In this document: positions 9,567 to 53,507 of the stretch, piece after piece
Position numbering within the stretch: position 1 is the first letter of the stretch
Layout of the letters: every line of letters starts with the position of its first letter
Assembly (NCBI RefSeq): GCF_006345805.1
Contig: NC_043003.1
Location: 30,132,001 to 30,196,000 of the forward strand
Source of the DNA: Octopus sinensis
Taxonomy: Eukaryota
Reading direction: 5' to 3'
DNA length: 64,000 bases
Made by a program: the position numbers and the translations under genes
The notes under the pieces: generated by a model
Seen by the model: the letters and a program-made list of their open reading frames with translations, nothing else
The model's database searches: none
Told to the model about the DNA's origin: nothing

Positions 9567-9587
9567 CATCGGCCGCGCTTTCGTAAA
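9567..9587 (-). promoter_or_regulatory. Conserved upstream motif of paralogue 1 (TTTACGAAAGCGCGGCCGATG)
   Basis: Lies ~200 bp upstream of the first-exon donor. Near-identical motifs occupy the equivalent position in paralogues 3, 4 and 5. Confidence 0.7.
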
Positions 9588-10044
9588 AGGACCTTTCTCT
9601 CACTCATCATTTTGTTTGATTAAATATACACAAGACGTAGAATGTAAAACCTCCTTTAAATAATACAAATTATGAAGACTGTAAGCAATTCCATTAATGT
9701 TGATATGACTAAAAGGTTTAGAAAGAAACATTTGTAGTGGTAGGTATGCCTGTGTGCGAAGAAATTTGATGTCCAACATGCGGTTACAAGTTCAATTTCA
9801 CTGCATGGCACCTTGGCGATTGTCTTTTACAATTGCTCCAGGCTGACTAAAGCTTTATAAGTGGATTTGATAGACAGAAACTTTAAAAAAGCTTGTTACA
9901 TAATGTGTGTGCGAGTGTTAAAGCCGTCTAAGGATCCATAAATCTGGAAAAAATGCACTTGTATATGTCAGTAGAATGGGTATATTAATTGAAGGTGTAC
10001 AGTATTATATATCCATCACAGCCGATTTTACCAATTGGTTTTGC

Positions 10045-10336
10045 ACGTGGCCGATGCCAGCGCCGCCTCGACTGGCTTCCATGCCGGTGGCACGTAAAAA
10101 GTACCAATCCGACCGTGGCCGTTGCCAGCCTCGCCTGGCACCTGTGCGGGTGGCATGTAAAAAGCACCCACTACACTCACGGAGTGGTTGGCGTTAGGAA
10201 GGGCATCCAGCTGTAGAAACATTGCCAGATAAGACTGGAGCCTGGTGCAGCCTTCTGGCTTCCCAGATCCCCAGTCGAACCGTCCAACCCATGCTAGCAT
10301 GGAGAACGGACGTTAAACGATGATGATGATGATGAT
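10045..10336 (+). mobile_element. (GAT)n-tailed SINE / LINE 3'-end fragment, family A
   Basis: Two gtggccg(a/t)tgccagc...ggtggca(c/t)gtaaaaag units, conserved body, and 3' end cggacgttaaacgatgatgatgatgatgat. Confidence 0.85.
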
Positions 10337-10511
10337 TCAACAGTGTTAAATAAGTTTGATTATTTAACCCTGCACTCTTCAGAGGTAGCCATTATGGAAT
10401 GAAATATGGTGACTCTTCTCTTCTCAATCATATATAATAATAATAATGAAATTATTGTATACAGTGCTCAGGTGCACTCATCTCCTGCAGTAGCCTTGTG
10501 TACAAATGAGT

Positions 10512-10515
<4 letters not shown>

Positions 10516-10575
<60 letters not shown>
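10516..10575. repeat. (AT)n microsatellite, ~30 units
   Basis: Directly visible. Confidence 0.95.
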
Positions 10576-10578
<3 letters not shown>

Positions 10579-14219: not shown

Positions 14220-15278
14220 TTATTCTTTTATTGTTTGTTTTGCATGTGCTTTTTCTTTATGATTAGACAAACTCCTATTCTCATTGTAAGTTTTACTACA
14301 CATATCACATTGATATGGTTTTACACCTGTGTGAACAGGTTTGTGACGATTTAAATTCTGATTATCAGCATATGATTTACCACAAATGTCACAGCTATAT
14401 GGTCTCACACCTGTGTGACCACGTATATGAAGCGTTAAATGACCTTTCCGTGAAAACATTTTACCACAGATATCACAATGGTATGGCTTTTCACCTGTGT
14501 GAATACGTACATGTTGAGTTAAATGACCATTCTGTGAGAATGTTTTACCACAGATATCACAGTGGTATGGTTTCTCACCTGTGTGCAAGCGTATGTGTTT
14601 AGTTAATCCACTTTTGTCAAAGAACCTTTTTTCACAGATATCACAAGGGTATGGTTTCTCACCTGTGTGAATACGTACGTGTTGAGTTAAATGACCATTC
14701 ACCGAGAATGTTTTACCACAGATTTCACAACGGTATGGATTATCACCTGTGTGCATGCGTATGTGTCTAATTAATGTACTGTTGTCAGTAAATGTTTTGC
14801 CACAGATATCACAGCGGTATGGTTTGTCACCAGTATGAGTGCGTGTGTGTCTAGTTAATCTACTATTACTAGAGAATGTCTTTCCACACATATCACAGTG
14901 GAATGGCTTGTCTCCTGAGTGAACATGTTTGTGATTAGTTAAGTTATTACATACAGAGAAGGTTTTCCCACAGATATCACAGTGGTATGGTTTTTCACCA
15001 GTGTGAGTACGAATATGAAGTGTTAAATGACCCCTTTGGGAAAAAGTTTTACCACAGATATCACAGTGAAATGGATTGTCACCTGTGTGAATACGTACAT
15101 GTTGAGTTAAATGACCATTTACAGAAAATGTTTTGCCACAAATGTCACAGTGGTATGGTTTCTCACCTGTGTGCAAGCGTATGTGTTTAGTTAGTATGGT
15201 TTTGCCAGAGAATGCTTTTCCACAGATATCACAGTGATATGGTTTCTCACCAGTGTGAGCATGTTTGTGATTAGTCAT
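14220..15278 (-). CDS. C2H2 zinc-finger protein, paralogue 2 (12 intact fingers; ORF starts at an internal Met)
   Basis: 352-aa ORF. Helices: GKTILTK, VNGHLTQ, QRGHLTL, VCNNLTN, SNSRLTR, DNSTLIR, VNGHLTQ, DKSGLTK, QNGHLTQ, RKGHLTL, DNQNLNR, ENRSLSN. The start Met is the helix Met of a broken finger. Confidence 0.8.
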   Translation of the reverse strand: MTNHKHAHTGEKPYHCDICGKAFSGKTILTKHIRLHTGEKPYHCDICGKTFSVNGHLTQHVRIHTGDNPFHCDICGKTFSQRGHLTLHIRTHTGEKPYHCDICGKTFSVCNNLTNHKHVHSGDKPFHCDMCGKTFSSNSRLTRHTRTHTGDKPYRCDICGKTFTDNSTLIRHIRMHTGDNPYRCEICGKTFSVNGHLTQHVRIHTGEKPYPCDICEKRFFDKSGLTKHIRLHTGEKPYHCDICGKTFSQNGHLTQHVRIHTGEKPYHCDICGKMFSRKGHLTLHIRGHTGVRPYSCDICGKSYADNQNLNRHKPVHTGVKPYQCDMCSKTYNENRSLSNHKEKAHAKQTIKE

Positions 15279-15760
15279 ATTACCTTTTTCAGAGAAAGTT
15301 TTGCCACAGACACCACTGTAATATAGCTGTTTACTTGCGTGAATGGATATGAGTCTGCACAGAAAAGGACTTCTGGAGAATGTTATAGCACAAATACAAT
15401 ATGTTTTGTCTCCTTTATGAGTAAATTTGTGAAGAATTTATTTATCAATTTAGAAGATGTTCTCCTCCAGATATCAAAGTTATATCGACTCTCACCTGAA
15501 TGAATACATTGGTGTGTAGTCAAATGACCTTGCTCAGAGAATGGTCTATTACAAGTATAACAGTGTTATACCAGTATGACACTGGTGCTTAGTCAAATTA
15601 TTGTTACAGAAGAAACATTTGCCACAGATAATGTATTGCTAAATTCTTTCATCTGAGCAATTGTTTAAATAAGGTATTAGATTGAATAAATGTTTATTTG
15701 ATATGATTTCTTATGTGTATCTACCTACACATGTCTGATAATATATTTTCCACATCTCAA
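15279..15760 (-). pseudogene. Decayed 5' coding region of paralogue 2 (leader plus ~5 broken fingers)
   Basis: Manual translation gives IICGKCFFCNNNLTKHQ, CNRPFSEQGHLTTHQCIHSGE and YCICAITFSRSPFLCRLISIH, with lost Cys/His ligands, frameshifts and an in-frame TAA at 15438-15440. The leader aligns with that of paralogue 3. Confidence 0.8.
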
Positions 15761-15910
15761 TTACACTGTTTATAACCTTGATTTTAATTTTACAGCAATG
15801 TGGAGTTATGGAGAACAATTACTTGTGAACTTGATAATATCATTCTTCTGTTTCCATAAACTGAAAAATTTCTTGAATCAGCAATTTGCATTTCAATGTC
15901 ACCACAAACT

Positions 15911-18337
15911 CTGAAATAAAGAATATATGGTAGAAAGAACAATGAAAATTTAACATGGAAGTTATTGAATGCTAAAATAACAAAGAAAGATCAGAAAATA
16001 CCTACAGAGGAAAGACAACAATATGGCTATGTAGTGAAAATGAATGATCCTATGTGTGGCTAGAAAAATTTAGGAAGAAGATAATATTGGGATACACAGA
16101 TACATAGCAAAAGATACAAGAATGTTTTTAGTCAGACTTGTAGGAACAGATATCTCAGGGACATCATTTGCATTGAAAACTATTGTTTAGTTACTATTAA
16201 TATTTTTAATACAATTAGTATTAAAAAGCTAGGAAATAATGACATGGACAGTAAAACAATAATAGTCAGTGAAAAATATAATTATTTTTGAAAACTCTCA
16301 TCTGTTTCCAAGAAAGATAATATTTACCCTTGACTAGCCATATTTTCTTTGTAGAATACAAGCAAAGGACACTACTTGTATGACAGTGACGCTCATTTAC
16401 AATTATCATGCAAAGGTAAGACAAGGGGAGACTAACATATACACACACACATATATATATATGTAAATATGTGTGTATATCCTTGAATATATATATATAT
16501 ATATATATATGAGTGCAGGACAAAAGCCCCACGGTTATATTTTGCTTTTTTCACCTTTTACTTGTTTTAGCCATTAGATTGTGGCCATGCAGAGGAATCA
16601 CCTTTTTTATTTTTACTTGTTGCAGTCATTAGACTGTGGCCATGCTGGGGCACCACCTTGAAGAATTTTTAGTCGAATGTATTGACGCCAAAATTTTAAA
16701 AAATTTTATTTGTTGCTGTTATTAGACTGTGGCCATACTAGGGCACTGCCTTGAAGAAATTTTAGTTGCAGAAAAATCAGCATTTTAAAATTTTAATTTA
16801 AAGTCTTTTGTTTTCTTCTCTCAGCACTTATAGATTAATGAGAATGGGCTGACCTTTTGAACTTTCTCTGGCCATAGAAGGTCTAACAGAATTATGGCGC
16901 TGAAGGCTCGTCCATTTGAACATACTTCTTATCGCTTTTATATTTCTGCACATTTTTTGAAGTAAATGCTTTCTCTTTTGTTATAATTCAGGCAATACGT
17001 ACATTGAATAGTAAAGTCTTGTGTTCTGTTATTCTATTCTACTTATTTATTTTCGATTGAATATATTTTGTTTACTTACTGGAATTTTGGAAAATAAAAG
17101 TTTTTTAATAATTTTAATAGTCAGAACAGTTGTTAAAGGAGATCTCCTTTGTGTTTCAAGCACATTCAGAGACCTGGCTTTTCTATGGAGATCAAACTTT
17201 GTTTTCAAAGGTAGGAGTTCAACAAGATGATCCTCTAAGTTCCTTCCTGCCTTCTCTCATCTTTATGGATACCATTAAGAAATGTGTGCTCTAAATTTAT
17301 GGTGTTTGGATGACAACACACTTCAGTAAAATAAGTACAGTTTTGCCAGGTTTCTCCCACAGACACACACAAACCTTGGGTAAAAATTAAAATTGTCAAA
17401 GTGTGAATTAATTTTCATGAATTCAGATTCTAGTCAGAGATAGCCAATTTTGAAAGGTTTCAAGCTGCAACCCATGGTATCAAGCTCACTTACATATAAA
17501 AGTTAATCCTTTTAAGAAGTCCATTCTGCTGGAAGCAAAACTTTAAAAGGTATGGTAGAAAAAGATCCCAGGCAAGATAAACACAAACAGTACCCTGTTG
17601 ATTGTACCCAGCATTTTTATAATTAGGCAGGTGAATGCTAAAGGCAGATATGAAAAAAACAGGAACCGGCAAGATTTTATGTATATCTCATATTCATAGG
17701 TTTTATTAAAGAACTCGTTAAATATAAACACATTCAGCATAAAAATGAGATATTAGTTGAAATATGCTAACAGTAAAAAATACATTTTCATTCAGTTATT
17801 TTTTACTGACATATTTACTTAATACGTCTGGCATAAACTAGAGGCGAGATGTTGCAAACAATAGAAAACAAAAAATGTTTGAGATTACTTTTACAATAAT
17901 TTATTAATAATATCTATGATGTATTATCTTTCTACTATATTTTGATGTTTTGGAATTTCGTTCAAATGAATATCGATAAGCATGCTGAACATACAATCCC
18001 TCGACTCTCGTGGGTGTTACGTTCCAAAACCTGTATTTACATACATGTACTGAGTGGATACACTGACCGGGTGTCCAAAATAAGAGATATAACCGTGGAA
18101 CGTATTGCTTTGTCATAATTCATAACAAATTATTCAAGATTATTATGAATGGTAAACGTCACTGATGTTTATGTTACGAAGAAATCTATTTGCATTTCAT
18201 TTACATTTAAATAGAAATATCTGAATGTAAATAACATCTCACTATTAATACGCCATTCAGTGGGTTGTTACAACAGAGATGATCGCACTAGAAATACTGA
18301 AACATAGTAACAATGAGCTAACAACAGATCAACTTAC
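15911..18337 (-). other. 5'-UTR intron of paralogue 2
   Basis: Donor CA|GTAAGTTGATC at 18337 and acceptor ...TTCTTTATTTCAG| ending at 15911, homologous to paralogue 1. Confidence 0.65.
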
Positions 18338-18511
18338 TGTATTTTGTCCTTTCTTTTCTTTTTTACTATTTGATGTAATATTAATGCGTGGGGGGCGGAG
18401 CAGTGGATATTAAAAGACAGAAATTATCTAACATGCTCAATTAAGTGAACTAAAATGACAACACAAAACAAGCTGACAGATTTTGGTACAGACCTAATTA
18501 ATGTATTAAAT

Positions 18512-18531
18512 CTTCAACATTATTTTCGTAA
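18512..18531 (-). promoter_or_regulatory. Degenerate copy of the conserved upstream motif (TTACGAAAATAATGTTGAAG), paralogue 2
   Basis: Same distance from the donor and same flank (cagacctaattaat) as in paralogue 1, but the GC/CpG core has become AT-rich. Confidence 0.5.
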
Positions 18532-18712
18532 TATTATTTTCAAGTGGTAACGAATTTAGTGCAGTGCAGTGATCATTAAAAACGCTAACTAGAAACAACG
18601 ATTCACTCAAATAAATAAAATTCTTTTCTTCTCTAGGCACAAGGCCCGAAATTTTGGGGGATTGCGGGAGAGCAGTTGGTTAGATCGATCACAATATGTA
18701 ACGGTAAATTTT

Positions 18713-25515: not shown

Positions 25516-26802
25516 CTATTGTTCTATGGGCAGGCTTTCATGTGATTTTTGTTTATGTTTAGTTAAACTTCTACTTTCAGAATAAGTTTTACCACAGATA
25601 TCACAATGATATGGTTTGACACCTGTATGAACAGGTTTGTGACGATTTAAATTCTGATTATCAGCATATGATTTACCGCAAATATCACAAGTGTATGGTC
25701 TCACACCTGTATGAACACGTACATGAAGTGTTAAATGACCTTTTTGAGAAAATGTTTTACCACAAATATCACAGTGAAATGGATTCTCGCCTGTGTGAAT
25801 ACGTACATGTTGGGTTAAATGACCGTTTTGAGAGAATGTTTTCCCACAGATATCACAATGATATGGCTTTTCACCAGTATGCATGCGTATGTGTATAGTT
25901 AAGCTATTACTCTCAGAGAATCTTTTCCCACAGATATCACAGTGGTATGGATTGTCACCAGTATGCATGCGTATGTGTCTAGTTAAAGCACTATTACCAG
26001 ATAATGTTTTCCCACAGACATAACAACAGAATGGCTTCTCTCCTGTGTGAACTTGTTTGTGACTAGTCAAATTATTACATACAGAGAATGTTTTTCCACA
26101 GATATCACAATGGTATGGTTTCTCACCAGTATGAGTACGCTTGTGTTTAACCATGCTTCCTCTTTGCGAGAATGTTTTCCCACAGACATCACAGTGATAT
26201 GGTTTTTCGCTTGAATGAATGTACTTGTGTCTATTTAAATCAGAACTTCGGGAAAATGTTTTAGAACAAATACCACACTGATATGGTTTCTCTCCTGTGT
26301 GAATACGTTTGTGAACAGTTAATTCACCATTTTGTGAAAATGTTTTTCCACAAATATCACAGTGATATGGTTTCTCACCTGAGTGAATATATTTGTGTTT
26401 AGTCAAATGAGCTTGCTGAGAGAATGCTCTCCCACAAATATCACAGTGATATGGTTTTTCACCAGTATGAATACGTTTATGCTTGGTCAAATTACCACTG
26501 TCAGAGAAAGTTTTACCACAAATTATGCATTGGTAAATTTTCTTTTCTTGCCGAACATTCTTATGCAAAGACAAAGAGTTGTTTTTAGTAATTGTTTTAC
26601 TATAAATTTTTAAATATTTAAGTTTTGAGCTTGTATGAAGTAATTTTTGCTTAAATAAAGCATTAGATTGTGTGAATGTCTTTTTAATGATGTTTGAATG
26701 ATATGGTTCCTTTTGTTTATTTATACATGTCTGTTTAGGTAGGTCACTAGATTCAGGATGTGTTTGCTCACAAACTTGACTCTCACACAGTTTATTCTCC
26801 AT
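25516..26802 (-). CDS. C2H2 zinc-finger protein, paralogue 3 (428 aa, 12 fingers)
   Basis: Intact ORF. Helices: DSGNLTK, QQAHLTK, QNGELTV, RSSDLNR, QRGSMVK, VCNNLTS, GNSALTR, ESNSLTI, QNGHLTQ, QKGHLTL, DNQNLNR, ESRSLTK. Confidence 0.95.
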   Translation of the reverse strand: MENKLCESQVCEQTHPESSDLPKQTCINKQKEPYHSNIIKKTFTQSNALFKQKLLHTSSKLKYLKIYSKTITKNNSLSLHKNVRQEKKIYQCIICGKTFSDSGNLTKHKRIHTGEKPYHCDICGRAFSQQAHLTKHKYIHSGEKPYHCDICGKTFSQNGELTVHKRIHTGEKPYQCGICSKTFSRSSDLNRHKYIHSSEKPYHCDVCGKTFSQRGSMVKHKRTHTGEKPYHCDICGKTFSVCNNLTSHKQVHTGEKPFCCYVCGKTLSGNSALTRHIRMHTGDNPYHCDICGKRFSESNSLTIHIRMHTGEKPYHCDICGKTFSQNGHLTQHVRIHTGENPFHCDICGKTFSQKGHLTLHVRVHTGVRPYTCDICGKSYADNQNLNRHKPVHTGVKPYHCDICGKTYSESRSLTKHKQKSHESLPIEQ

Positions 26803-27262: not shown

Positions 27263-28388
27263 CTGAAATAAAGAATATAAGGTAGAAAAGTCAATGAGAA
27301 AGTCAACATCAATGTTATCAGTGATAGGACTTGACTAGAAACACATTGAGTACCAAAGAAATCTATATATATATATAATCATATCTATATAGGAAAAACA
27401 AAATAATATGGATAATATGATGTAAGGATGGGAACTAGAAAGGAGATTATAATGGAATATGCAGCTACAGAAAGAGAACAGGAATCATTTTAGTGGGACT
27501 TCAGGGATGATTCTTACAAGGAAAACAATAGAACATGTAATAACGTCAAATTAACTTGAAAAAAAGTTACAACACTGCGTAAACATTTTTCTTACTCTTT
27601 ACATACAATGATGTTTACATTGATGAGTCAAGACGTAGATGTCTCTGAGCAACCACCAACAGCTACTGCAATTTAGGTAAGATAATGGTCTTTGATGCTG
27701 TGGAGGGACGGCCAGGGAAATATTGAATGAAGACTAAAGACAAAACATATTGGAACACTTTATCGAGAGTGCTAAATGACGTAAACTGATAGTTACATTT
27801 TTTTTTCTTTTTCAATAAAAAAAAAACTGAATATGATTAAACAGGCTGAATGCAAGATAGATTTTTATATTTATACATACACACTCTTAAAGACTCTGTA
27901 GGGGGGAAAAATGGATGTCCCAAATATAATTTCACTACAAAATGAATTGTTTGAAATGAGACTCAGCTGACAAAAGAAAGAAAAGAATTATGGAAAGCAT
28001 TGTAGCAATATGTCACCATTAATAATAGATAATTTAATGTCACCATAATTAGTAGCTGTAAATATTGTTTAAACTGAACATCGCTGACCCTTAATTTTAA
28101 AAAAGTAATACATATTGTGAGTTGTTACAGCAGAGACATTTTTACTGGTAACACTGGGGAGTCTCAACGTAGTCACCCGCTCTGCTAGAAATAACAGCCA
28201 CCTTCACTCGAATCACAACTACTGTCTTAAAGGAAATGACACATTAGACAATGTAATCCGAAACAAACATAAAAAAAGACGGGATGGTCAGAGTTGGAAT
28301 GCCTTACATCATAGGTTTGTTCAGTCGGGGCTAATTTGGGATGAAAACAACAATAACATCGTTAGCAACCAACAACAAATCAACTTAC
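27263..28388 (-). other. 5'-UTR intron of paralogue 3
   Basis: Donor AA|GTAAGTTGATT at 28388 and acceptor TTTTCTACCTTATATTCTTTATTTCAG| ending at 27263. Confidence 0.7.
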
Positions 28389-28529
28389 TTTGTTTTTATT
28401 TTTTTCACTCATGTAAACAATATTAGGTGAACGGAGCTGTGGATATTAATAAACACAACATACTTTTCACATGTTCGTTCAATGAACTTTTTTGATAACA
28501 AGCGAACAGATTTAATACACGCAAATCAA

Positions 28530-28740
28530 CAGCTGTACTTTCGTAAAATGACTTGAATTATATTGTTCAGTATATAGGTGATGGAATGGTAGAATCGTTA
28601 GAACGCCAGAGAAAATATCTTGAGGTATTTTTAAGGGGTTCTTTACGTCCTGAAATCAAATCTAGCCGTGATCAACTAAGTCTTTCGTCTTTATGTACTC
28701 TTAATGAATGTAACAAACCACCAGCCGTACTTTCGTAAAA
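28530..28740 (-). promoter_or_regulatory. Conserved upstream motif of paralogue 3, duplicated (28530-28548 and 28722-28740) around a SINE-like insert
   Basis: cagctgtactttcgtaaaa and cagccgtactttcgtaaaa flank a degraded family C SINE head (ggtgatggaatggtagaatcgttagaacgcc). Confidence 0.65.
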
Positions 28741-39149: not shown

Positions 39150-40125
39150 AGGCTACAGTTGTGATCTCACTTTACTTGATGCATCTTCTCAGTTCAGAGG
39201 TCTCAGTTTTTCGTCATTACCTCTGTGAGGCCAAACGTTCGAAGGTCATGCTTCACCACCTCATCCCATGTCTTCCTGGGTCTCCCTCTACCACAGGTTC
39301 CTTTCACTGTTTGGGAGTGATACTTCTTCACACAGCTCTCCTCATCCAGTGCAGCCGTATCTCTTACATGCCACATCTAATGCTTCTAATGTCCAACATT
39401 TTCTCTCAGGGTGCTTACACTCTGTCATTTGTGCACACTGACATTACACATCCAGCGGATTATGCTAGCTTCAATTCATTCAAGCCTATGCATGCCTTCA
39501 GCAGTCACGGCCCATATTTCATTGCTGTGAAGCATGGCAGTTTGCTCACATGCATCGTACAATCTACCTTTCACTCTGAGTGAGAAACTCTTTGTCAGCA
39601 GTAGGGGAAGAAGCTTTCTAAACTTTGCCCAAGCTATTCTTATTCTAGTGGTAACACTCTCTGAGCATTTTCCACCACTACTAACTTGGTCACCAAGGTA
39701 GCGGAAGTTATCAACTACTTCTAGTTTCTCCCCCTGGACTGTAATGGAATCTGTTTTCCGAGCATCTGTGGTGTTTATTGCCCATGCATCAGCCGCACAC
39801 GAAAGCCAGCTTCCCAGTTAACCTTCCTTTGATGTTGCTGTACTTCTTATGCGTCCATAGCTTACACTGGGTACATCTTCTGGAGTTTCTACCTACACCT
39901 TTCCTACAAATTGAGCAGAGGTTTGTGATGTGTTCACCTTCCCAATTACTAGGACTTTGGTTTTTGCAACATTGGCTCTAAGGTCCTTCAATTCTAAATC
40001 TTGCTTCCACACCTGAAATTTCTTCTCTAGTTCTGGTAGTGAATCTGCTATGAGAGTCAGGTCATCAGCATAGAGGAGCTCCCAGGGGCAACCTGTCTTG
40101 AATTCCTCTGTTATTACCTGAGCTT
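39150..40125 (-). mobile_element. RTE-clade (BovB-like) LINE 3' fragment, same family as 12.0-13.5 kb
   Basis: Aligns with ~12120-12660. Translation includes DSFRYLGD and GRGRPRKTWDEVVKHDL. Confidence 0.85.
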
Positions 40126-40512: not shown

Positions 40513-40870
40513 ATCATCATCATCATCATCATCGTTTAACGTTCGTTTTCCATGATAGCATGGGTTGGACAGTTCAACTGGGGTCTGGGAAGCCAGCAGG
40601 CTGCGCCAGGCCCAGTTTGATCTGGCAGTGTTTCTACAGCTGGATGCCCTTCCTAACGCCAACCACTCCGTGAGTGTAGTGGGTGCTTTTTACATGCCAC
40701 CTGCACAGGTGCCAGGCGACGCTGGCAAACGGCCACGATCAGATGGTGCTTTTTACGTGCCACTGGTACGGAGGCCAGTCGGGGCGGCGCTGGTAACGGC
40801 CACGTTCGGATGGTTCTCTTATGTGCCACCGGCACTGGTATCACAGCTACAATTTCCATTGATGTTGATC
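40513..40870 (-). mobile_element. Family A element
   Basis: (CAT)n then cgtttaacgttcgttttccatg..., with 2-3 internal tandem units. Confidence 0.85.
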
Positions 40871-41896: not shown

Positions 41897-41917
41897 TTTA
41901 CGAAAGCGCGGCTGATG
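41897..41917 (+). promoter_or_regulatory. Conserved upstream motif of paralogue 4 (TTTACGAAAGCGCGGCTGATG)
   Basis: 20/21 identical to the paralogue 1 motif, ~155 bp upstream of the donor. Confidence 0.7.
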
Positions 41918-42073
41918 CTAAATATATTAATTAATTTTGTATTAGTGTCATTTGGATTGTTCAGTGTGATCAAGAAGTTGAGAATAGAAGAAGCTTATAT
42001 CTTTTAATTGCTCACAAATCTGTTTTTCTCTCGATATTCATATACAAATAGTGAAGAAAATCAGAAAGAAAAA

Positions 42074-45000
42074 GTAAGTTGGTTTGTTGTCACTGACTAA
42101 TTATTTAATATGATTTTTAGTATTACTAATGCAAACGTCTCTTGTAGCAGTAACAACCCACAATATGTATTAATGGTGATGCGTTATTTTACGTTTATGT
42201 TTAATCTCTGTTTAAAAGTTAAACATCAGTGATATTTGATTTTAGCAGCTATTTACCACCACTAAGTATAGTAGCATTGAAGCTTTTGTTATTAATTATG
42301 TCATATTGCTACAGTGTTCTCCATTGTTAAATCTTTACTAGCTAAATCTTATTTTTATCAAATCATTTTGTAGTCCGTCATGAAATATTTTGGACGAAGT
42401 CTTTGTGCTTGTGTGTAAGCAGTAGTTTGTTTTATGTTTAGTGTACTTAATTCACTTTAACGTAGTTTGAATCTTACATGTTAACTGCAACGAAATATGA
42501 AATTATCAAACTGCATGTTGTTGTCTTGGACATTATATATGTGTGTGTAATTACATTATACAATGTAGAAACCCTCTTCAAGACGGAAATGTGAGGAAAA
42601 TTTGGCTGTAATTTATAATATTTTAGATGATCGTCGTATTAGGTGGTTCTTCATTATTATAACTGTAAACTCTAGAGAAAATCCAAATAAAAACATGTCA
42701 GAATAACAGTACAATACAAAGATGAACGTCATTAAATTTTGTAATAATAAAATAAAATATGGATATATAATTTTTTTAAAGTATAAATGATTTAACTGTA
42801 TAAAATAGTAATTTAACTATATAAGATATATTTAATAGTGAAATCATTACTAAATTTGATCAAACAAAACACTCCTTGTTCAATACAATTTTATATATAT
42901 TTGAGGCTTTTTTTTTTTTCTTTTGTCAAAAATTTAATGGCATTTGTTCTGCATTTTCTTATTCTGGCTTCGGTATTTTCAGTTTATGGCTATTATGGAA
43001 AATATTTCCGCGTATTTATTTTTTTACTAGATGAATATTAATAGTGGTAAAATATTTGGAAAAGGTAATTTTTAGAAACCTCCTTGCTTGTTAATAATCT
43101 AAGTAGACGGGTTAATTTCACTATTTCATGAATGGAAATTGCTAAGTTAGAAGACAAGCAAAATGCCGTTATACATAGATACTTACGCACGCGCTCACTG
43201 TCGCACACAAGTGGGCTTCGCGATTCAATAATTCAATACTTTAAAAATAGCGATAATAATAGAAAAGTTATTTATTGTTGTAACCATTGAAACTATCGGT
43301 CAAACTAGTACGTTGCTGAATATGTATATTTTCATCTTATTATCTCATAAATCTTGTTCATATAAAATGTAAATAATCTCCCATGTTTTCATCCTAACTT
43401 TTTAGCGCAACTGTAAATTAAACAAGCTGGCTGCCAGCTATGCGTTAGGTATGCAGATTGATCAGCTCTATGTACTGAAGCCCCAAGTAATAATTGTATT
43501 TAAAATTACAAAGAGTATATTCAGTTGCTGTTTAGATCCCGGCCCATGATTAAAACTAGTTTTGCTGATGCCACTTTTTACGTAGACAAAATACGTTGTT
43601 AGGTCATCTGTTTATTGCTTACAGTGTTGGTTGAAATCTTTAGATTTCTCCTTTGGCACACTTTCCTCTCCAATCTCCAGTTGTCACTTACTTTTACCTA
43701 CCTCTCCTACTTATCGCGTAACGCTAGTTTTTCATTATATCCATCCCCTCACCCATTTCTCATCGCTGATTCTCTTATGCACTCTTGCAACCTCGACCCA
43801 CTCACTTCTCACCTTGTACCTAGGTCCCCCCAGACTCCACATCACTACTATTTTCATCTCATCCTAGCTCTGCCTCAATCACACCACCCTCTCTTCTTAA
43901 ACATGAGTAGCCATGTAGCTTCTCTGCAGCAAGAAACCCGTTCTGCTCTGCCCTCCACACTTCTCTCAATCTTTAATCTCACCACCCACTTCATCTCCTA
44001 GCATAAAGCCACCCCTCTTGAGATTTGCAGTCCTGCAAATTGCATGGTGACCTTACTAGTGTTGGTAGTATGAAAAAGCATCTAGCCATAGAAGTCAAAC
44101 CAAAGCAGATATTGGGGCATGATGCAGTCCTTGGACCTGTCAGATCCTGCCAAACCATCCAGTCCATGCCAGCATGGAACACAGATGTTAATGATGATGA
44201 TATATATTACACATATGTCTCAATATATAAAGTTTATTGGGCTATATATATTAGGGGTTAGGATTAAAAATTGTTTGTATGAACAGGTAAATGTATTTAA
44301 CATTTAACACATATCAGTTGTCGTTAGTTTTATAAACATCATAAAGAATGAAATATGTGGCAGTTTCATGGGCAAAAAGAAAATTAAAAATTGAATTTGT
44401 GACAATTGCTTTTTTGCAAAATTGTTTCCTCCCATGATGAGTCATAAAAAAAATTTCAGAAGTCAAACATGAATATCTTTATTGCTACTTACATTCTCCA
44501 AAACTGATAGGGATGAAATGGAATTTTGGAGAAATTTTTATTGCTGAACTGTAATTTCTAATGTTTAAGGCACAGAAATCCAAAACAATATTTGAGAGCA
44601 AATAAATAAAAATGTTAGTATGAAACGTTTTTATTCTGAATATTTGTAAGCAAATCAATTAGCTCTTTTGCAAGTTCATAATAATATGTGTATGTAGTTT
44701 TGTTTCTTATGTATGCACTCGCTGTCAACAAATGAAATGTCAAAGAGATGTGTTTGATGTGAGGGTCACAGTTAAGATGATATCTGGTCTATATTAAGCA
44801 GATAAATATTTAGTAATTTAAATGCTGAATAATTTTGAGGGCAGATAGTGAATGACATGGAAGAGTTTAGCAGAAATTACACATTAGTATTAAATTTCTG
44901 TATAATTATACATCATAGTTAACAGAATAATCTTGTTCATTTGTATTTCTCTCAATATTGAGATAACAACTAAGTATAGTAGCATTGAAATATTTGTTAT

Positions 45001-45232
45001 TATGTCACATTGCTACAATGTTTTCCATTGTTAAATCTTTGTCAGCTAAATCTCATATTATCAAATCATTTTGTAGTCAGTCATGATATATTTTGGACGA
45101 AGTCTCTGTGTGTAAGCAATAGTTTGTTTTATGTTTAATGTACTTAATTCACTTTAGCAAAGTTTGAATCTTGTATGTTAACTGCAGCAAAATATAAAAT
45201 AATCAAACTGCATGTTGTTGTCCTGGACATTT

Positions 45233-45263
<31 letters not shown>

Positions 45264-46384
45264 AACTATATTATACAACGTATAAACCCTCTGAGGGAAA
45301 TTTGGCTGTAATTTATAGTATTTAAAATAATGTAGTCATAATCATCAGCATCAATTTATATCCCCTTTCCATGCTGAGTTTCACATGGTTATACACTGAT
45401 TGATGTAGAAAAGTAGAAATGCTCAGACAGTAAATAACACAGGAATATCAGCAGTATGTAAAATGTGTTTCAGTCTTCTTATGACTTAACTAATGAGGTC
45501 ATAATAAGGCTGGAACATATCCAATTATTTAATCATGTGGCAACTGAATTTCAACTAATTTAAGATGATATTAAGGAAACCAAGAAAATTATGTTAGGAA
45601 ACCAGTTCTTCTTACTATTGTAAATTGAACAGATACCAGTAACCAGTAAAACTCACAGTGTAGTACTCCTTTCCCATCTAAAACTCCTGTTTCTGCACAT
45701 TCAGATAACCGAGAATGTATCCAAATTTGAGTCACCTGATTGATGCAAAATCTCTCACAGATATTCTCCAGTCTCTAGCCCACAGGTAGGCTGTTGTATT
45801 TCTCTGCTTTTTGTATGAGTTCTGCAGTGACCTTTCCTTCTGGAACTGGCTGGTCACATGTCATTTCCACTCAGCTCCCAACTTATATCTCTCACCTCCC
45901 ATTGCCCATGTTTTGTACAAACTCCTCAGGCACTGCACTCATCATTATACTCAGATCTTCCCCCAGAAAGTTGTCCCTCCGATCCTGTCTTTTTCGCAGT
46001 CCATTGACTTGCAACACTAACTTTTTTTACTATATTTCTGTAGAAGTACACTGCCTTTGTTGGAATTTATTTAAAAAAACATTGAAGTATTTAGTTAAAT
46101 AGCTTTGCATTATTAATTTAGTGTTTGAAACATCAATTAGCATGAAATTTTGATTGAAGGTTTTAATTTAAGCCACTTTAAAACAGGGAATTTGTGTCAT
46201 ACAGCCAGGTTGATATCAAAAGGGTTAGGTAAAATGTTTACAGTATCAGTTTCCCCAGTTTTGAAAAGTTTGTAAAGGCCTTGAGTCCTGCTCCTCCTTC
46301 CAGACTTGAAAAGAAAATTAATTTATCTAATAATCTGTTAGTAAACTTTTCATTGACTTTTCTGTCTTATATACTTTATTTCAG
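42074..46384 (+). other. 5'-UTR intron of paralogue 4
   Basis: Donor AA|GTAAGTTGG at 42074 and acceptor TTTTCTGTCTTATATACTTTATTTCAG| ending at 46384. Confidence 0.7.
42261..45325 (+). repeat. ~365-bp direct duplication (42261-~42625 and 44969-~45325)
   Basis: Both copies begin actaagtatagtagcattgaa and end ggaaatttggctgtaatttata; roughly 85% similar by eye. Confidence 0.8.
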
Positions 46385-46815: not shown

Positions 46816-47988
46816 ATGGAAGACAAACTGGAGGAGAGTCAGGCCTGTGATAAAACACAGCCTGAATCTAGTGATGTATCTAATCAGGAGTGTGTAGATA
46901 CAGAGAAAAAAGCTTACCATTTTGACATTCATAAGAAGACATTCTCACAATATAACGTACTTCTTACAAGCATAAAGCTTAAATATTCTAAAATGTGTAA
47001 CAAAACAACTGCTAAGAGCCGTTCATTCTCCAAGGGTATTCAGTCAGATCAGACTGATTTTGAATGCTTAATCTGTGGTAAAATATTCTCTCGGAAATCT
47101 TATTTGACTAGACACAAACGAATACACAGAAGCAAGAAATCATACCGCTGTGATATCTGTGACAGAGCTTTCAATGACAGCAGTACTTTGACGAATCATA
47201 GACGTATTCATACTGATGAGAAGCCATATCACTGTGATATTTGTGGGAGAAGGTTCACTCAATTTGGTCATTTGAGTAGACACAAATATACTCATTCAGG
47301 AGAGAAACCGCACCGTTGTGATATTTGTGGGAAGGCATTCTCACAGGTTGATAGTTTAACTCGTCACATACGTATTCACACAGGAGAGAAACCATATCAA
47401 TGTGGTGTTTGTGGTAAAACATTTTCTCGAAGCTCTTATTTAAGTGTTCACAAATCTGTTCACACCAGAGAAAAGCCACACCGCTGTGACATCTGTGGGA
47501 AAACATTCTCTGGGAGAGGTAACATGACTAATCACAAACGTATTCACACTGGTGAAAAACCATACCATTGTAATATCTGCGGGAAGACCTTCTCTGGATG
47601 CAACAGTTTAACTAGTCACATACAAGTTCACACAGGAGATAAGCCATACCACTGTGATATTTGTGCAAAAACGTTCTCTACCAGTAGTAGATTAACTAGA
47701 CATATACGCACTCATACTGGTGAAAAACCATTCCATTGCAACACCTGTGGTAAAACATTCTCTCAAAATGGTCATTTAACTCAACATGTACGAGTTCACA
47801 CTGGTGAAAAACCATTTCACTGTGATATCTGTGGTAAAACATTCACTCAGAGAGGTCATTTAACACTTCACATACGTGGTCATACAGGTGAGAGACCATA
47901 CAGTTGTGATATTTGTGGTAAAGCTTATGCTGATAATCAGAGTTTAACTCGTCATAAACCTGTGCACACAAATAAGAAAAAATCATGA
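46816..47988 (+). CDS. C2H2 zinc-finger protein, paralogue 4 (390 aa, 11 fingers)
   Basis: Intact ORF. Helices: RKSYLTR, DSSTLTN, QFGHLSR, QVDSLTR, RSSYLSV, GRGNMTN, GCNSLTS, TSSRLTR, QNGHLTQ, QRGHLTL, DNQSLTR. Confidence 0.95.
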   Translation: MEDKLEESQACDKTQPESSDVSNQECVDTEKKAYHFDIHKKTFSQYNVLLTSIKLKYSKMCNKTTAKSRSFSKGIQSDQTDFECLICGKIFSRKSYLTRHKRIHRSKKSYRCDICDRAFNDSSTLTNHRRIHTDEKPYHCDICGRRFTQFGHLSRHKYTHSGEKPHRCDICGKAFSQVDSLTRHIRIHTGEKPYQCGVCGKTFSRSSYLSVHKSVHTREKPHRCDICGKTFSGRGNMTNHKRIHTGEKPYHCNICGKTFSGCNSLTSHIQVHTGDKPYHCDICAKTFSTSSRLTRHIRTHTGEKPFHCNTCGKTFSQNGHLTQHVRVHTGEKPFHCDICGKTFTQRGHLTLHIRGHTGERPYSCDICGKAYADNQSLTRHKPVHTNKKKS

Positions 47989-49404: not shown

Positions 49405-50428
49405 CATTCTAAAAATTAAAAAAAAATTAACAGCTGTTTTGTATAAACCATTGTAAACTTATTTTGGTTCAGCCTTGCCTGCATTACATGATGGTAGAAT
49501 ATTAATAGGATTGAAATTACTTCATACTGAGGGGGAAATATTTCAAAGGGATTACTATGAAATTCATTCTTTTGATTCCAACCTCTCTGACACTACATGT
49601 GATGCTATGACAAACTTCTTATTTTAAAGTGATGTAATTGTTCCATCAAAATTACCTGTTATGTTCCAAACACCAGCTTTATAACAGCAAAGTTATTCTA
49701 TTAAATTATTTCGTTTTAAAATATATTGAAATAGAAAGGCAGTATATTTTCACAGAAATATAGGAACAGAAGGGTTTAGAAAATAATTGAAGATGTAGAA
49801 GAGTACTTGCCTTATTGCCTCTGGTTTACCCAGTTACCATGCTGTTACTAACGAAAGCCTCATGGTTACAGCTTAGTGGTAGTTGATAATGAGCTGTGAA
49901 TAATGGATGAAACATAATGATGGCATAAATACATGGCGTGCAGTTCAATAACATCATTCATAGCCCAATATCTATAAAGGGAATTTCTCACCAGTTTTTG
50001 CAGCAGAGGTCTTTTCATGTTTTAATGTGCACAAATCTGTTAAATATGATGATACACACCTATTATCCATATAAATTAGTTTTGTTAAGAGAACTGAATG
50101 AAATATGCATAATTATATCAAATTAACAATATTTCATTGTGAGAAACTTGGCAAAGGATAGCTATAGTTAAATATCTTTATTTTGAAGATCAAGTTGACT
50201 TAGTCTTTAAGTTTTACCTATTGGTATGTTCATCTACTCAATTTGATTGTTGCAAAAAGTTTAAGTCTACTTTCAATATAGTCACACTATTAGTAAATGT
50301 TCTGTTATTATTCTTAAGTGCTTTAAAATAAATGAGATTATTTTAACATTTAATTGTAAATTATATCAGTAGGCATTGAACATACAAAACATGAAGATTG
50401 AGAGAAGGAATACACTATACACATATCT
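49405..50428 (+). repeat. ~1-kb segment present as a split inverted copy at 59322-59875 and 61635-62108
   Basis: ORFs 49938..50126(+) and 59624..59812(-) translate almost identically, and the flanks align as reverse complements. Confidence 0.9.
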
Positions 50429-52999
50429 CCATCACTTGTAATTTATGATGAAGAAATTCTAAAGATGGCAGAATCATTAGAATATAAGTAAAAATGCTTT
50501 GTGATATTTTTCTAAATGTTCTAGTTCAAATCCTACCAAGGCCCACTTAGCCTTTCACCCTTCTGAGGTCAATAAAAAATATAGTGCAAGTCAAGTACTG
50601 TGGTTGATGGTACCAATAACCATTTTCTTTTAAAAATTGTTGACCTTATGCTTAAATTAGAAGCCATTATTAGTAAGTTCTAAATGGTGGATGCAATAAA
50701 TACTTCCATAACAAGCTACTGACAAAGTAGATTTATTTTACTACAGGATAAAACCTGCTTTGATATCTTGTGAATTTCAGTTTATTATATTACTTTTTTA
50801 ATGATTAGCTGAAGAAGCATGCTTTGTTTAATTGATTCTGTGAGTTTATATTTCAACATTGTACAACATTTTATATATTATTGTATTTTATTTCTCTCAC
50901 TCGATTTGAAAAATTATGAAATTGTAAGCAGTGATGTAGCATGGGTAAGGCCATAGAGGCAGTTATCTGGGTGCAAAATTTAAAAAGAAAAAAAAAGAAA
51001 AATTTTTTTAAAATAGCACTCTCCCCAACAGTACTTGTTTTGCCACTGGTACTAGCAACACATACTATACCACTATTTGTAAACTAGGACTTTTGTAACT
51101 TCTCTATTACTTTGATCACCTGCAAGTAAGGATAGTTTAAGAATAATCATAAATATATTTAAATTATAGTCTCAGGTTTCCAGCATATGGTTAAATAATT
51201 GCCATCAACTTCTGTTTCATTTTATGTGGGCACTTATATGAGAAATAGAAGCTAAATATCCCTCATAACACTCTTATCATGTTAAATAAAGATTTGAAAA
51301 AGATATTGTTTTGCTGCAGTTAAGATGGCATGTGTGGAACGTAAATATACAGCCAAATATTAAGTCCACTTTCGTTAATCAAGTGCTAACAAAGAGCATG
51401 GTCTGTTATGAAGACTTATCAACCTCTCTTTTGGTCATTGAAGAGTAGGTGTGTGAAGGTAGAATTTTTATCTTTAGCTGCCCCTATCACTTTTACTATA
51501 TCTTTCTCCCAAACAGTACGGTGATGAAACAAAACTACTATTTTTCTTATATTATGTCGTGACCCTTCTACAACCAGAGAAAAATCAAGAGGTCAACTTA
51601 TTCACATTAATTTCTGAGCACAGAAGCGAGAAAATAATAGATTTAAGATTTGCTTGACAATGTTGAGAAAAGTGGATTTGGTTATACTCCAATTAGCTAT
51701 AGCTAGAGTATACTGTAGCTGTTTTGCTATATCACTCATCTTCCCAGATAATTTGCTGGAGGCAAAGGATCATTACTAGGAAAACTTGCAGGAACGTTAA
51801 CTACGTGAAAATTGAAAAACGTTCAAAATTGTGAATGAAAAGTATTAAATTGCAGGTAGATGTGATGCAAAACCACGAAAAATAGTGGATATCAGGAGAG
51901 AGAATCTGAGGTGATGTATATGGAACTGGTCAATCCAAGGATATAAAAAATGGCATTTGCCCAAGATACCACCCAGTGAATGAAACCCAGGACTCCGTAG
52001 TGAGTCTGGATAGTTCAATGTTGCTTTATGTGTATTGGCAGCACTGAGTATGCACGTGATTCATTAATGAGCTGTGTATACATATGTGAGAACAGTGCAG
52101 CTGCAGACTTTCTGAGACAAGAAAGTGCATTCCCAATCCATGATATATTTTTTAAATTTTCAAGCAGAAGTGTGCTCACTGTGCCTTGAAAGAATTGCAG
52201 AGGCCAAGTGGGTCTGGCATTGTGGGCGTAGACTTTTGCAGTGCGAATGACATGCTGGGCGTTAAGAGCCAAATTTTCTCTATTTAACTGTGACCATCCA
52301 CGGGTGTTACAGAGGTAAGTTGTATCTGGAAACAAGGCGCTGAAAGCATGATGAGACATCCGATGTGCGTTGAGCCGGAAAAGGAGCTGAATAGGTACAG
52401 ACATGGAAAAACAAGTCAATGAAAACACGTGCATGTGTGTAACTGGGTGTAGGCATGCACACATGTATGTATGAACGTTGTAGTGGAAAGATTAAATAAC
52501 CCACGGAAAATTAAGTAAATCTGCGGAAGCAGCAAACATTCAAAAGAAAACATGCAACCCGTGTTGAGAAAAGTGGATCTGGTTTCGAATAGGCTTTTCT
52601 ATACTGTAGCTGTTCACTACAGTTATGTAGTTAAAAAGTTGCAGGTAGCCGAAATTAAAGCATAAATTAAATTGAAATATACATGCACTTTGTTCTAATT
52701 GCATCTAACAACACATTTACGATTCATAGCCTAAACATATCTAGAATTTTCGGCACAACTTAAACACAGAGATTCCGATATATTTATGTAACGATATGAA
52801 GAGAAGGTAATCTAGTTTTACCAAAACTACTGTTAAAGTGTTAGGGTTATGTGAAGTCAGAGTAGTTTTGGTAAAAGTATATTACCTCCCCGTTATATAG
52901 GTGCGTCGGCACTTCTGTAATTAAGTAGTAGCGAATTTTCTCCTGCAATATTTTTTTAGGGGGAAAAAACAATGTTAGTCATTGACTAATACATATCTT

Positions 53000-53385
53000 G
53001 GGTCTTTTCGGTTTGTACGGCAGTTTTTTTCTAGCGGTGTCATATGAAATTGTCACCCATAATTATGACCCTAGTATCGATGTATTGCATTTCAATCTGT
53101 TTTAGGGTTATGGTCAGGGGGGGGGGTATCTTTTTTTCTTCACAAATGTAAATAAACCCAATCTGTTTCTTAAACGAGGGACATGTTCATACGGCACAGA
53201 ATGTTTTTTTACTTCAATAGATGTATTTGATTGGTTGAAATTGAAGAAAAATAAAAAAAAATATCTTACAAGCTATAGAATTTTCTCAATAAAGCCAAGA
53301 GTACATTCTACCAGTATACGAAGTTTAAAATTTTTTAGTAACCTAGAAATTATGTTAAAAACTGCCGTTCAAACCGAAAAGATCC
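53000..53385. mobile_element. MITE, ~29-bp TIRs, 8-bp TSD CATATCTT
   Basis: Left end gggtcttttcggtttgtacggcagttttt; right end reverse complement ggatcttttcggtttgaacggcagttttt. CATATCTT lies at 52992-52999 and 53386-53393. Confidence 0.8.
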
Positions 53386-53488
53386 CATATCTTTTTTTTT
53401 TCCCCCCTTTACTGCCACAATTATTTTATAGTACACTTTCTAGTGTTCTCCACAGTAAAAATGTTGACGCTCACTTTTTTGTCGATAG

Positions 53489-53507
53489 TACGAAAGTACG
53501 GCTGATG
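53489..53507 (+). promoter_or_regulatory. Conserved upstream motif of paralogue 5 (TACGAAAGTACGGCTGATG)
   Basis: ~130 bp upstream of donor CA|GTAAGT at 53637, which is followed by the conserved intronic gtaacaactcacaatatgta block. Confidence 0.7.

What the first reader, a model, noticed from the sequence alone, without database searches (positions are those of the whole stretch)
9567..53507. Novel ~20-bp CpG-containing promoter motif shared by all paralogues
Seen: TTTACGAAAGCGCGGCCGATG (gene 1), TTTACGAAAGCGCGGCTGATG (gene 4), TACGAAAGTACGGCTGATG (gene 5) and TTTTACGAAAGTACGGCTGG (gene 3). Each lies 130-335 bp upstream of the first donor and survives although surrounding DNA has diverged and CpGs usually decay. 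I do not recognise it as a known factor motif. It may be a cluster-specific core promoter element that co-ordinates the family.
Basis: partly seen in the sequence, partly recalled or inferred. Interest (0 to 1): 0.7.

Follow-up and report, generated by a model that had tools for sequence, protein, structure and literature searches.

The report
Shared promoter motif of octopus zinc-finger genes
A 21-base sequence sits in front of the intact genes of one family of tandemly duplicated octopus zinc-finger genes and has been kept while the DNA around it diverged, so it is most likely a binding site for a still unknown regulator of these genes.

Summary
The four quoted strings are real and non-random: 4 exact matches to TACGAAAGYRCGGCYG against 0 expected. 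The window is Octopus sinensis chromosome CM016865.1, with five tandem C2H2 zinc-finger genes.

The element is bipartite: TTTACGAAAR, two free bases, CGGCTGATG. It always lies on the gene's strand, 150-217 bp upstream of the splice donor of a short non-coding first exon. It is the best-conserved 21-bp block of the promoter alignment (identity 0.84 against a background of about 0.3), and paralogue homology begins at it.

- It is not in all paralogues. Gene 2 and a sixth, relic promoter carry decayed copies.
- The gene-3 copy quoted is a distal duplicate.
- The middle CpG varies.
- CpG survival is a regional property of these promoters, not special to the motif.
- It is not cluster-specific. Two more family genes 50-70 kb away have it, and its 15-nt core precedes three genes of another subfamily on another chromosome, where nothing else aligns. 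Four other zinc-finger loci lack it.

The most likely reading is a promoter-proximal site for a sequence-specific, possibly methylation-sensitive, factor. The transcription start site, the factor and the activity are untested.

The parts
9567..9587 (-). Motif, gene 1: TTTACGAAAGCGCGGCCGATG. In O. vulgaris the spacer reads CA instead of CG.
18512..18532 (-). Decayed motif, gene 2: ATTACGAAAATAATGTTGAAG. It has 6 mismatches to the consensus. The gene's 5' coding part is broken by stop codons and frameshifts.
28527..28547 (-). Motif, gene 3, proximal copy and positional homologue: TTTACGAAAGTACAGCTGTTG.
28719..28739 (-).
41897..41917 (+). Motif, gene 4: TTTACGAAAGCGCGGCTGATG. This equals the consensus.
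53487..53507 (+). Motif, gene 5: AGTACGAAAGTACGGCTGATG.
57950..57970 (+). Relic sixth promoter: ATTATGAAAATATGGCTGATG, with both conserved CpGs changed to TpG. There is no CpG at all within +-200 bp and no zinc-finger exon within 8.6 kb downstream.
9356..9373 (-). Splice donor block of exon 1, gene 1 (ACA|GTAAGTTGATCTGTT). Homologous blocks lie at 18323-18340(-), 28374-28391(-), 42071-42088(+), 53633-53646(+) and 58464-58477(+).
9544..9557 (-). Second conserved promoter block, ATTAATTAGGTCTG, which contains TAATTA and lies about 9 bp downstream of the motif. It also occurs at 18489-18502(-) and 41926-41939(+), and is weaker in genes 3 and 6.
6013..6029 (-). Acceptor of non-coding exon 2 (TATATTCTTTATTTCAG). 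It is identical at 15911-15927(-) and 27263-27279(-), with 1 mismatch at 46368-46384(+).
4180..5352 (-). Gene 1 coding exon: 390 aa, 11 fingers, ATG within this exon.
14220..15278 (-). Gene 2 finger ORF of 352 aa. Finger similarity continues to 15629 but is interrupted.
25516..26802 (-). Gene 3 coding exon: 428 aa, 12 fingers.
46816..47988 (+). Gene 4 coding exon: 390 aa, 11 fingers.
55041..56594 (+). Gene 5 coding ORF: 517 aa, 15 fingers, with an internal five-finger duplication. The ancestral ATG leader at about 54889 is frameshifted.

Best explanation
The sequence is a promoter-proximal cis-regulatory DNA element of a subfamily of tandemly duplicated octopus C2H2 zinc-finger genes, kept by purifying selection.

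Shown:
- Its form is TTTACGAAAR, two free bases, CGGCTGATG.
- It always lies on the gene's strand.
- It marks the 5' edge of everything that is still alignable between paralogues.
- It lies 150-217 bp upstream of the donor of a short non-coding exon 1. The genes have three exons, with the ATG in the last one.
- It sits inside a patch that has kept its CpGs in an otherwise CpG-depleted region.

Inferred:
- It is the docking site of a sequence-specific DNA-binding protein, or of two adjacent ones. About 15-19 informative, non-palindromic bases fit a multi-finger protein.
- That protein switches on or licenses these promoters.
- The two invariant CpGs (ACG and CGG) would make binding sensitive to cytosine methylation.
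- Copies whose gene is broken or missing are no longer protected and lose the site, partly by CpG-to-TpG decay.
- The 15-nt core is older than this cluster, because another subfamily on another chromosome has it with a different 3' extension. The element therefore has a common core plus a family-specific flank.
For: - The motif is non-random: 4 exact matches against 0 expected, and 5 against 0 with up to 3 mismatches.
- It is the top-ranked 21-column window of an unbiased alignment from -250 to +420. Pairwise identity is 0.84 (four genes) or 0.78 (five genes). The donor block scores 0.64-0.70 and the background 0.26-0.35.
- There is no paralogue homology upstream of it in any pair.
- Conserved donor and acceptor blocks define a non-coding exon 1 and exon 2 downstream.
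- Prediction test: two further family genes 49-72 kb away (L007) carry it on their own strand with the same donor architecture.
- Three genes of another subfamily on O. vulgaris OX597834.1 carry the exact core about 1.6 kb upstream of their ATG, and nothing else aligns. Chance expectation is 0.0 exact cores in 113 kb.
- Orientation matches the gene in all 12 copies.
- The decayed copies go with a disrupted gene 2 and with a relic promoter that has no finger exon and no CpG within +-200 bp.
- Between O. sinensis and O. vulgaris the only change inside any copy falls in the free spacer.
Against: - There is no transcription start, chromatin, methylation, binding or expression data, so 'promoter' rests on gene anatomy.
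- O. sinensis and O. vulgaris are 98-99% identical, so the orthologue comparison has almost no power.
- The three copies on the other chromosome are recent tandem duplicates and count as one independent observation.
- Genes 2 and 6 share derived bases (A1, A10), so part of their divergence is one event. Those same bases occur in an intact copy in L007.
- Gene 5 keeps the motif although its N-terminal leader is frameshifted.
- No orthologous locus from O. bimaculoides was obtained.
- No motif library was available, so 'unknown factor' means only that I could not match it from memory.
Confidence: 0.6

Rival explanations
1. The motif is a core-promoter or leader element. Transcription would start at the initiator-like GTCA(G/T)T just upstream, so the motif occupies about +3 to +23. 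It would act as a downstream promoter element, or as the first bases of the 5' UTR.
For: - Paralogue homology begins about 8 bp upstream of the motif and nothing further upstream is conserved.
- AAGTCAGTT (gene 4) and AAGTCATTT (gene 3 proximal) resemble the arthropod and vertebrate initiator consensus. That consensus is from my own knowledge.
- CpG counts peak in the 0 to +200 bin.
Against: - The initiator-like bases are absent from gene 5, the gene 3 distal copy, both L007 copies and all L011 copies.
- TATA-like sequences upstream are inconsistent in position.
- The distance from the motif to the donor varies from 150 to 217 bp.
- There is no RNA structure.
Confidence: 0.2
2. The motif is an auto- or cross-regulatory site. 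The family's own proteins would bind the 3' half (GGC-NGA-TGA) through the three C-terminal fingers that all five paralogues share, so that the array regulates itself.
For: - All five proteins share consecutive fingers with helices QNGHLTQ, Q(K/R/S)(G/S)HLTL and DNQ(N/S)L(N/T)R, while their other fingers differ.
- A crude canonical recognition code, recalled from memory, predicts GAC/GNC-NGA-AGA, which matches GGCTGATGA at 6 of 7 specified bases. My rough estimate of the chance of such a match over all offsets is about 0.05.
Against: - The code is unreliable and was applied after seeing the motif.
- The part conserved across subfamilies is the 5' core, not this 3' half.
- The shared fingers may simply reflect common descent.
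Confidence: 0.07
3. The motif is a neutral leftover. The block would be unconstrained and survive by chance, by a local mutational cold spot or by short-tract gene conversion.
For: The promoter patches as a whole retain CpGs, so part of the CpG survival needs no selection on the motif.
Against: - Flanks are at random-level identity while 16-19 of 21 bases are kept in six gene-associated copies.
- The core recurs on another chromosome with no flanking similarity.
- Gene conversion would carry the flanks along with it.
Confidence: 0.04
4. The motif acts as an RNA element in the 5' UTR, through structure or protein binding on the transcript.
For: It may be transcribed if the start site lies at or upstream of it.
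Against: - Folds of four exon-1 regions are no more stable than shuffles (z-scores +0.09 to +1.37) and differ from each other.
- There is no Rfam family and no tRNA in the window.
Confidence: 0.03
5. The motif is part of a dispersed repeat or transposable element that happens to lie near these genes.
For: The region is rich in transposable elements.
Against: - Every copy is collinear with the same exon-1 and donor architecture and has the gene's orientation.
- Apart from gene 3's distal duplicate, which itself lies in that gene's promoter, no copy was found away from a promoter in 64 kb plus about 136 kb of other loci.
- Between subfamilies only 15 nt are shared.
Confidence: 0.03

Closest known systems
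Conserved sequence element (CSE) of clustered protocadherin promoters. It is a core of about 22 bp common to all 52 variable-exon promoters, next to a gene-specific element (SSE), and is bound by the 11-finger protein CTCF (PMC3333863).
   Same: - A block of about 20 bp containing CpG is kept in front of each member of a tandem paralogue array while the rest of the promoter diverges.
- Its orientation is fixed.
- There is a common core plus a group-specific flank: TACGAAARNNCGGCT followed by GATG here, and by TAGAG/ATGAG in the other subfamily.
- Its length suits a multi-finger protein.
   Different: - The sequence is unrelated and, from memory, does not fit the CTCF consensus.
- The genes are zinc-finger transcription factors, not adhesion molecules.
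- Binding, promoter choice, enhancer looping and methylation dependence are all untested here.
Shared promoter architecture of the zebrafish chromosome-4 zinc-finger (FiNZ) genes. These fall into TATA-box 'sharp peak' and TATA-less 'broad peak' groups, expressed in waves at genome activation (as summarised in PMC10547256).
   Same: - Large, lineage-specific tandem zinc-finger families whose members inherit a common promoter type through duplication.
- This suggests co-regulation.
   Different: - In zebrafish the shared feature is a generic TATA box and the start-site shape, defined by CAGE.
- Here it is a specific 21-bp motif defined only by sequence conservation.
Downstream core-promoter elements of arthropods (MTE, DPE, pause button). 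This comparison rests on my own knowledge.
   Same: A G/C- and CpG-containing short block lies close to a possible initiator in an AT-rich promoter.
   Different: - Its position relative to the start site is unknown.
- An initiator-like sequence is present in only two copies.
- The sequence does not match those consensus sequences.

Membership tests
Paralogue-array promoter element (protocadherin CSE type) | A block of about 20 bp conserved among the promoters of tandem paralogues while flanking promoter DNA diverges | tested here: met
   Identity is 0.84 for the block against about 0.3 for the background. The block is kept in two more family genes, and its core is kept in another subfamily.
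Paralogue-array promoter element (protocadherin CSE type) | Fixed orientation and position upstream of each first exon | tested here: met
   All 12 copies lie on the gene's strand. Positional copies are 150-217 bp from the exon-1 donor, and 162 bp in L007.
Paralogue-array promoter element (protocadherin CSE type) | Bound by CTCF or another defined architectural protein, and required for promoter activity | not testable with these tools
   No binding data, reporter data or motif library were available. From memory, the sequence does not resemble the CTCF consensus.
Core promoter elements (TATA, initiator, DPE/MTE) | Fixed distance to the transcription start site | not testable with these tools
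   No transcript 5' ends were available. The exact-protein look-ups returned only genome assemblies.
Core promoter elements (TATA, initiator, DPE/MTE) | A consensus initiator or TATA box at a consistent offset in all copies | tested here: not met
   GTCA(G/T)T occurs only in gene 3 (proximal copy) and gene 4. It is absent from the L007 and L011 copies. TATA-like runs lie at inconsistent offsets.
CpG-island promoter | High G+C with CpG near expectation over several hundred bp | tested here: not met
   G+C is 0.28-0.37 within +-200 bp. CpG is enriched only 2-3 fold over a depleted background, where the window's observed/expected CpG is 0.37.
Structured RNA or known RNA family | A match to an Rfam family, or a stable conserved fold | tested here: not met
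   There are no Rfam hits and no tRNA. Fold z-scores are +0.09 to +1.37.
E-box (CANNTG) site | CANNTG present in the conserved copies | tested here: not met
   Only the gene 3 proximal copy reads CAGCTG. The others read CGGCTG or CGGCCG.
Dispersed repeat or transposable element | Copies with repeat-type flanks that are independent of gene position | tested here: not met
   All copies are collinear with exon 1. Gene 3's distal duplicate lies in the same promoter, and no copy was found away from a promoter in the sequence held. A genome-wide check was not possible.

The most novel reading that the evidence does not exclude
Octopus zinc-finger arrays would use a protocadherin-like promoter system. 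A common 15-nt core plus a subfamily-specific flank in front of each paralogue would be read by a multi-finger protein, possibly by the conserved three-finger module of the family's own products. The methylation state of the two invariant CpGs would decide which paralogues are expressed. That would be a dedicated cis-code for regulating part of the very large cephalopod zinc-finger expansion.
Probability: 0.1. Interest if true: 0.7.

Novelty: new member of a known kind. Interest (0 to 1): 0.42.

Why it matters
Octopuses carry one of the largest lineage-specific expansions of C2H2 zinc-finger genes known. I found no paper describing a promoter motif for them.

A short motif with a defined sequence marks the promoters of at least two subfamilies on two chromosomes. 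That gives a concrete handle for several experiments:
- scanning genomes to delimit the co-regulated set of genes;
- fishing for the binding protein;
- testing whether CpG methylation switches paralogues off;
- dating gene death, because dead copies lose the site.

The practical value is modest until start-site, binding and expression data exist.

Tried and rejected
- **N-terminal profile search**: no hits. The search tool seems to cap hit length at about 1.75 times the query length, so proteins of 380-430 aa could not appear.
- **Full-length protein search**: swamped by generic vertebrate zinc-finger proteins. Its only octopus hit, P0074, is not on record in the contig index.
- **Walking off the right end of the window** with a transposase-like ORF: not on record.
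- **O. bimaculoides orthologue of the cluster**: not found. None of the short octopus hits carries the family's C-terminal finger signature.
- **Literature search for the motif strings**: only unrelated primer sequences.
- **A tenth-kilobase look-alike at 39787-39805** (CATCAGCCGCACACGAAAGCC): a chance 10-mer inside a transposable element, not a copy.
- **TTAATTA read as a TATA box**: its distance to the next conserved TCA varies from 23 to 51 bp, so I rejected it.
- **RNA structure, Rfam and tRNA**: nothing.
- **O. sinensis against O. vulgaris footprinting**: too little divergence to be informative.
- **L010 candidate** (TACGAAAATAAAGCTGTTG, 2.1 kb upstream of an O. bimaculoides zinc-finger ORF): two core mismatches, within the chance expectation of 2.2, so I did not count it.
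Full report
**What the window is.** The window is 100% identical to Octopus sinensis GCA_006345805.1, chromosome CM016865.1, over the 51 kb covered by three fetched loci. This places it at about 30,132,001-30,196,000. The O. vulgaris orthologue is 98.3-99.4% identical.

The window is AT-rich (34% G+C) and strongly CpG-depleted: observed/expected CpG is 0.37 and TpG+CpA is 1.27. It holds five C2H2 zinc-finger genes. Genes 1-3 are on the minus strand and genes 4-5 on the plus strand. Each has 11-15 fingers in one large exon that also contains the ATG. The rest is decayed transposable elements.

**Observation check.** The four quoted strings exist at the stated places. TACGAAAGYRCGGCYG occurs 4 times against 0 expected. 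The 21-mer with up to 3 mismatches occurs 5 times against 0 expected.
- The fifth match, at 28527-28547(-), is the positional homologue for gene 3.
- Gene 2 has only a decayed version at 18512-18532(-).
- A BLAST of the exon-1 modules against the window turned up a sixth, relic promoter. At 57950-57970(+) it reads ATTATGAAAATATGGCTGATG, and a donor-like AATA|GTAAGTTAAT follows 518 bp downstream.
- No finger exon follows that relic within 8.6 kb.

**Gene anatomy.** Downstream of the motif all copies share a splice-donor block, A(C/A)A|GTAAGTTGAT. Further on, four genes share an identical 17-nt polypyrimidine acceptor, TATATTCTTTATTTCAG. A second acceptor lies just before the conserved ATG. ATG codons in exon 1 are not conserved.

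The genes therefore have two short non-coding exons and one coding exon. The motif lies 150-217 bp upstream of the first donor, on the gene's strand. This is the basis for calling the region a promoter. No transcript 5' ends could be obtained, because the exact-protein look-ups returned only genome assemblies.

**Is it more conserved than its surroundings?** I aligned -250 to +420 of the five positional copies with MAFFT. The motif is the best 21-column window: mean pairwise identity is 0.84 without gene 2 and 0.78 with it. Next is the donor block at 0.64-0.70. The upstream region, the rest of exon 1 and the intron average 0.26-0.35.

Upstream of the motif, no pair of paralogues shares any detectable similarity apart from one young repeat. 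The motif is therefore the 5' limit of what has been kept.

The consensus is TTTACGAAAR, two free bases, CGGCTGATG. The two free bases read CG, CA or TA.

**The CpG argument.** The promoter patches as a whole keep CpGs: 5.4-6.8 per 200 bp next to the motifs against a window mean of 2.2, and 7-19 CpG within +-200 bp of intact copies. The middle CpG of the motif varies.

CpG survival as such is therefore a regional property, presumably reflecting germ-line hypomethylation of these promoters (an inference). What is specific is that the two outer CpGs (ACG and CGG) are invariant in every copy attached to an intact gene. The one exception is gene 3's proximal copy, which reads CAG while the distal copy of the same gene keeps CGG.

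**Decayed copies.**
- Gene 2's motif has six mismatches, and the 5' third of its coding exon is broken by stops and frameshifts.
- The relic promoter has lost both CpGs to TpG and has no CpG at all within +-200 bp.
- The two share derived bases (A at positions 1 and 10). An intact copy in L007 has the same A at position 10, so those bases are a subfamily variant and not damage.
- Gene 5 keeps the motif although its ancestral leader is frameshifted.

The link between an intact motif and an intact gene is suggestive. It rests on few and partly non-independent cases.

**Tests outside the window.** The third homologue search returned short octopus zinc-finger proteins, which gave access to six more loci.
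- **L007** lies 49-72 kb to the left on the same chromosome and contains two genes of the same subfamily, with the same leader and the same C-terminal fingers. Both have the motif upstream on their own strand: TTTACGAAAAGGCGGCTAATG and TTTACGAAAATACGGCTGATA. One has the same donor block 162 bp downstream, and both have the exon-2 acceptor. This is a successful prediction.
- **L011** is from a different chromosome of O. vulgaris (OX597834.1) and holds three tandem genes of another subfamily, with leader MMEDKLCENKV. Each carries GAGTACGAAAATGCGGCT about 1.6 kb upstream of its ATG, in a CpG-rich patch. When aligned with the window's promoters, only the 15-nt core TACGAAARNNCGGCT is shared.
- **Chance level.** Exact cores are expected 0.0 times in the 113 kb of non-family loci in 100 Markov simulations. 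The three L011 copies are recent duplicates and count as one event.
- **Loci without the core.** No core was found in L008 (O. bimaculoides), L009 or L012 (O. sinensis), which together hold about five or six evaluable zinc-finger genes, or next to the histone genes of L009.
- **L010** (O. bimaculoides) has a two-mismatch candidate, which is within chance.

The element is therefore linked to subfamilies. It is neither a general feature of octopus zinc-finger genes nor specific to this cluster.

**What it is not.**
- Not a known RNA or tRNA.
- Not a stable or shared RNA fold.
- Not an E-box.
- Not a dispersed repeat within the sequence held.
- Not a classical CpG island.
- An initiator-like GTCA(G/T)T precedes it in only two copies.

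**Most likely mechanism.** Shown: a strand-specific, bipartite block of 19 informative bases under purifying selection, at the 5' edge of the promoter and first-exon module. Its core outlives all other promoter sequence between subfamilies.

Inferred:
- It is a binding site for a sequence-specific factor. Its length and asymmetry suit a multi-finger protein or two adjacent factors.
- That factor activates or licenses these promoters.
- The two invariant CpGs could make binding methylation-sensitive.
- Silenced copies decay.

The main rival is a start-site-overlapping core or leader element, which I put at about 0.2. A speculative variant is binding by the family's own conserved three-finger module. 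It rests on a recognition code recalled from memory and is only a lead.

**Comparison with what is known.**
- The closest analogue in how it works is the protocadherin CSE: a core of about 22 bp in every promoter of a tandem array, next to a gene-specific element, read by the multi-finger protein CTCF (PMC3333863).
- The closest analogue in gene type is the shared promoter architecture of the zebrafish chromosome-4 zinc-finger genes (PMC10547256).
- The octopus sequence matches neither. A full-text search for the motif strings found no description of it.

I rate it a new member of a known kind, of moderate interest.

**Limits.**
- There are no start-site, chromatin, methylation, binding or expression data.
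- There was no genome-wide scan.
- No orthologue outside the O. vulgaris/O. sinensis pair was obtained.
- No transcription-factor motif library was available.

Noticed in passing
window 28527-28547 and 28719-28739 (-): Gene 3 carries two motif copies 192 bp apart, each followed by a weak ATTAA block. This looks like a short local duplication of the promoter module. The distal copy keeps CGG and the proximal copy reads CAG.
   Followed up: partly
window 57950-58480 (+): A relic sixth promoter, closest to gene 2's. It has no CpG within +-200 bp, a donor-like site 518 bp downstream after extra inserted sequence, and no finger exon up to window-equivalent position 66.6 kb (L006).
   Followed up: yes
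window 55041-56594 (+); L004 against L005: Gene 5 contains a tandem duplication of a five-finger block (QYGHLSR QSDKLAI RSSDLNR RRSNMTN QNGHLTQ, twice). The O. vulgaris allele is about 0.6 kb shorter there, with a gene call of 351 aa against 517 aa. The ancestral ATG leader is frameshifted.
   Followed up: partly
window 14220-15629 (-): Gene 2 keeps a 352-aa finger ORF, but its upstream fingers and leader are broken by stops and frameshifts. An annotated 443-aa model joins it to exon 2 of gene 1 (ending near 5980). A 477-aa model runs from gene 4's ATG past 66.6 kb. These look like read-through or merged models.
   Followed up: partly
all five proteins, C-terminal end: Three consecutive fingers with nearly identical recognition helices (QNGHLTQ, QxGHLTL, DNQxLxR) are shared by all five paralogues and by the two L007 genes, while the N-terminal fingers differ.
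   Followed up: partly
window 5092-5352, 26527-26802, 46816-47067: The roughly 90-aa N-terminal 'non-finger' region gives 28-35% tblastn matches to the finger arrays, so it looks like degenerate fingers. The leader ME(D/N)KLCE.Q recurs in octopus zinc-finger proteins from other chromosomes.
   Followed up: partly
window 10045-10336 (-) and 40516-40805 (+): A 293-bp repeat, 91% identical and in inverted orientation, lies upstream of genes 1 and 4 at different distances. It is CpG-rich and probably a young transposable element.
   Followed up: no
window 31191-32655 (-); 60511-60846 (+); L006 20325-20938: Decayed non-LTR reverse-transcriptase fragments (RVT_1) and a helix-turn-helix ORF (HTH_23/HTH_29, perhaps a transposase remnant) lie between and beyond the genes.
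   Followed up: partly
window 9212-9599 (gene 1 promoter): All six O. sinensis to O. vulgaris differences in the 700 bp around gene 1's motif are G to A on the gene strand, and only one is at a CpG. This is a strand-biased pattern that I cannot explain.
   Followed up: partly
L010 6509-6527 (+), O. bimaculoides CM046607.1: TACGAAAATAAAGCTGTTG lies in a CpG-containing patch 2.1 kb upstream of a zinc-finger ORF of another subfamily. It could be a diverged copy of the motif, but it is within chance expectation.
   Followed up: partly
tool behaviour: In all three homologue searches no listed hit exceeded about 1.75 times the query length (749/428 and 203/116). Short queries therefore cannot retrieve long family members, and the window's own proteins never appeared.
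   Followed up: no
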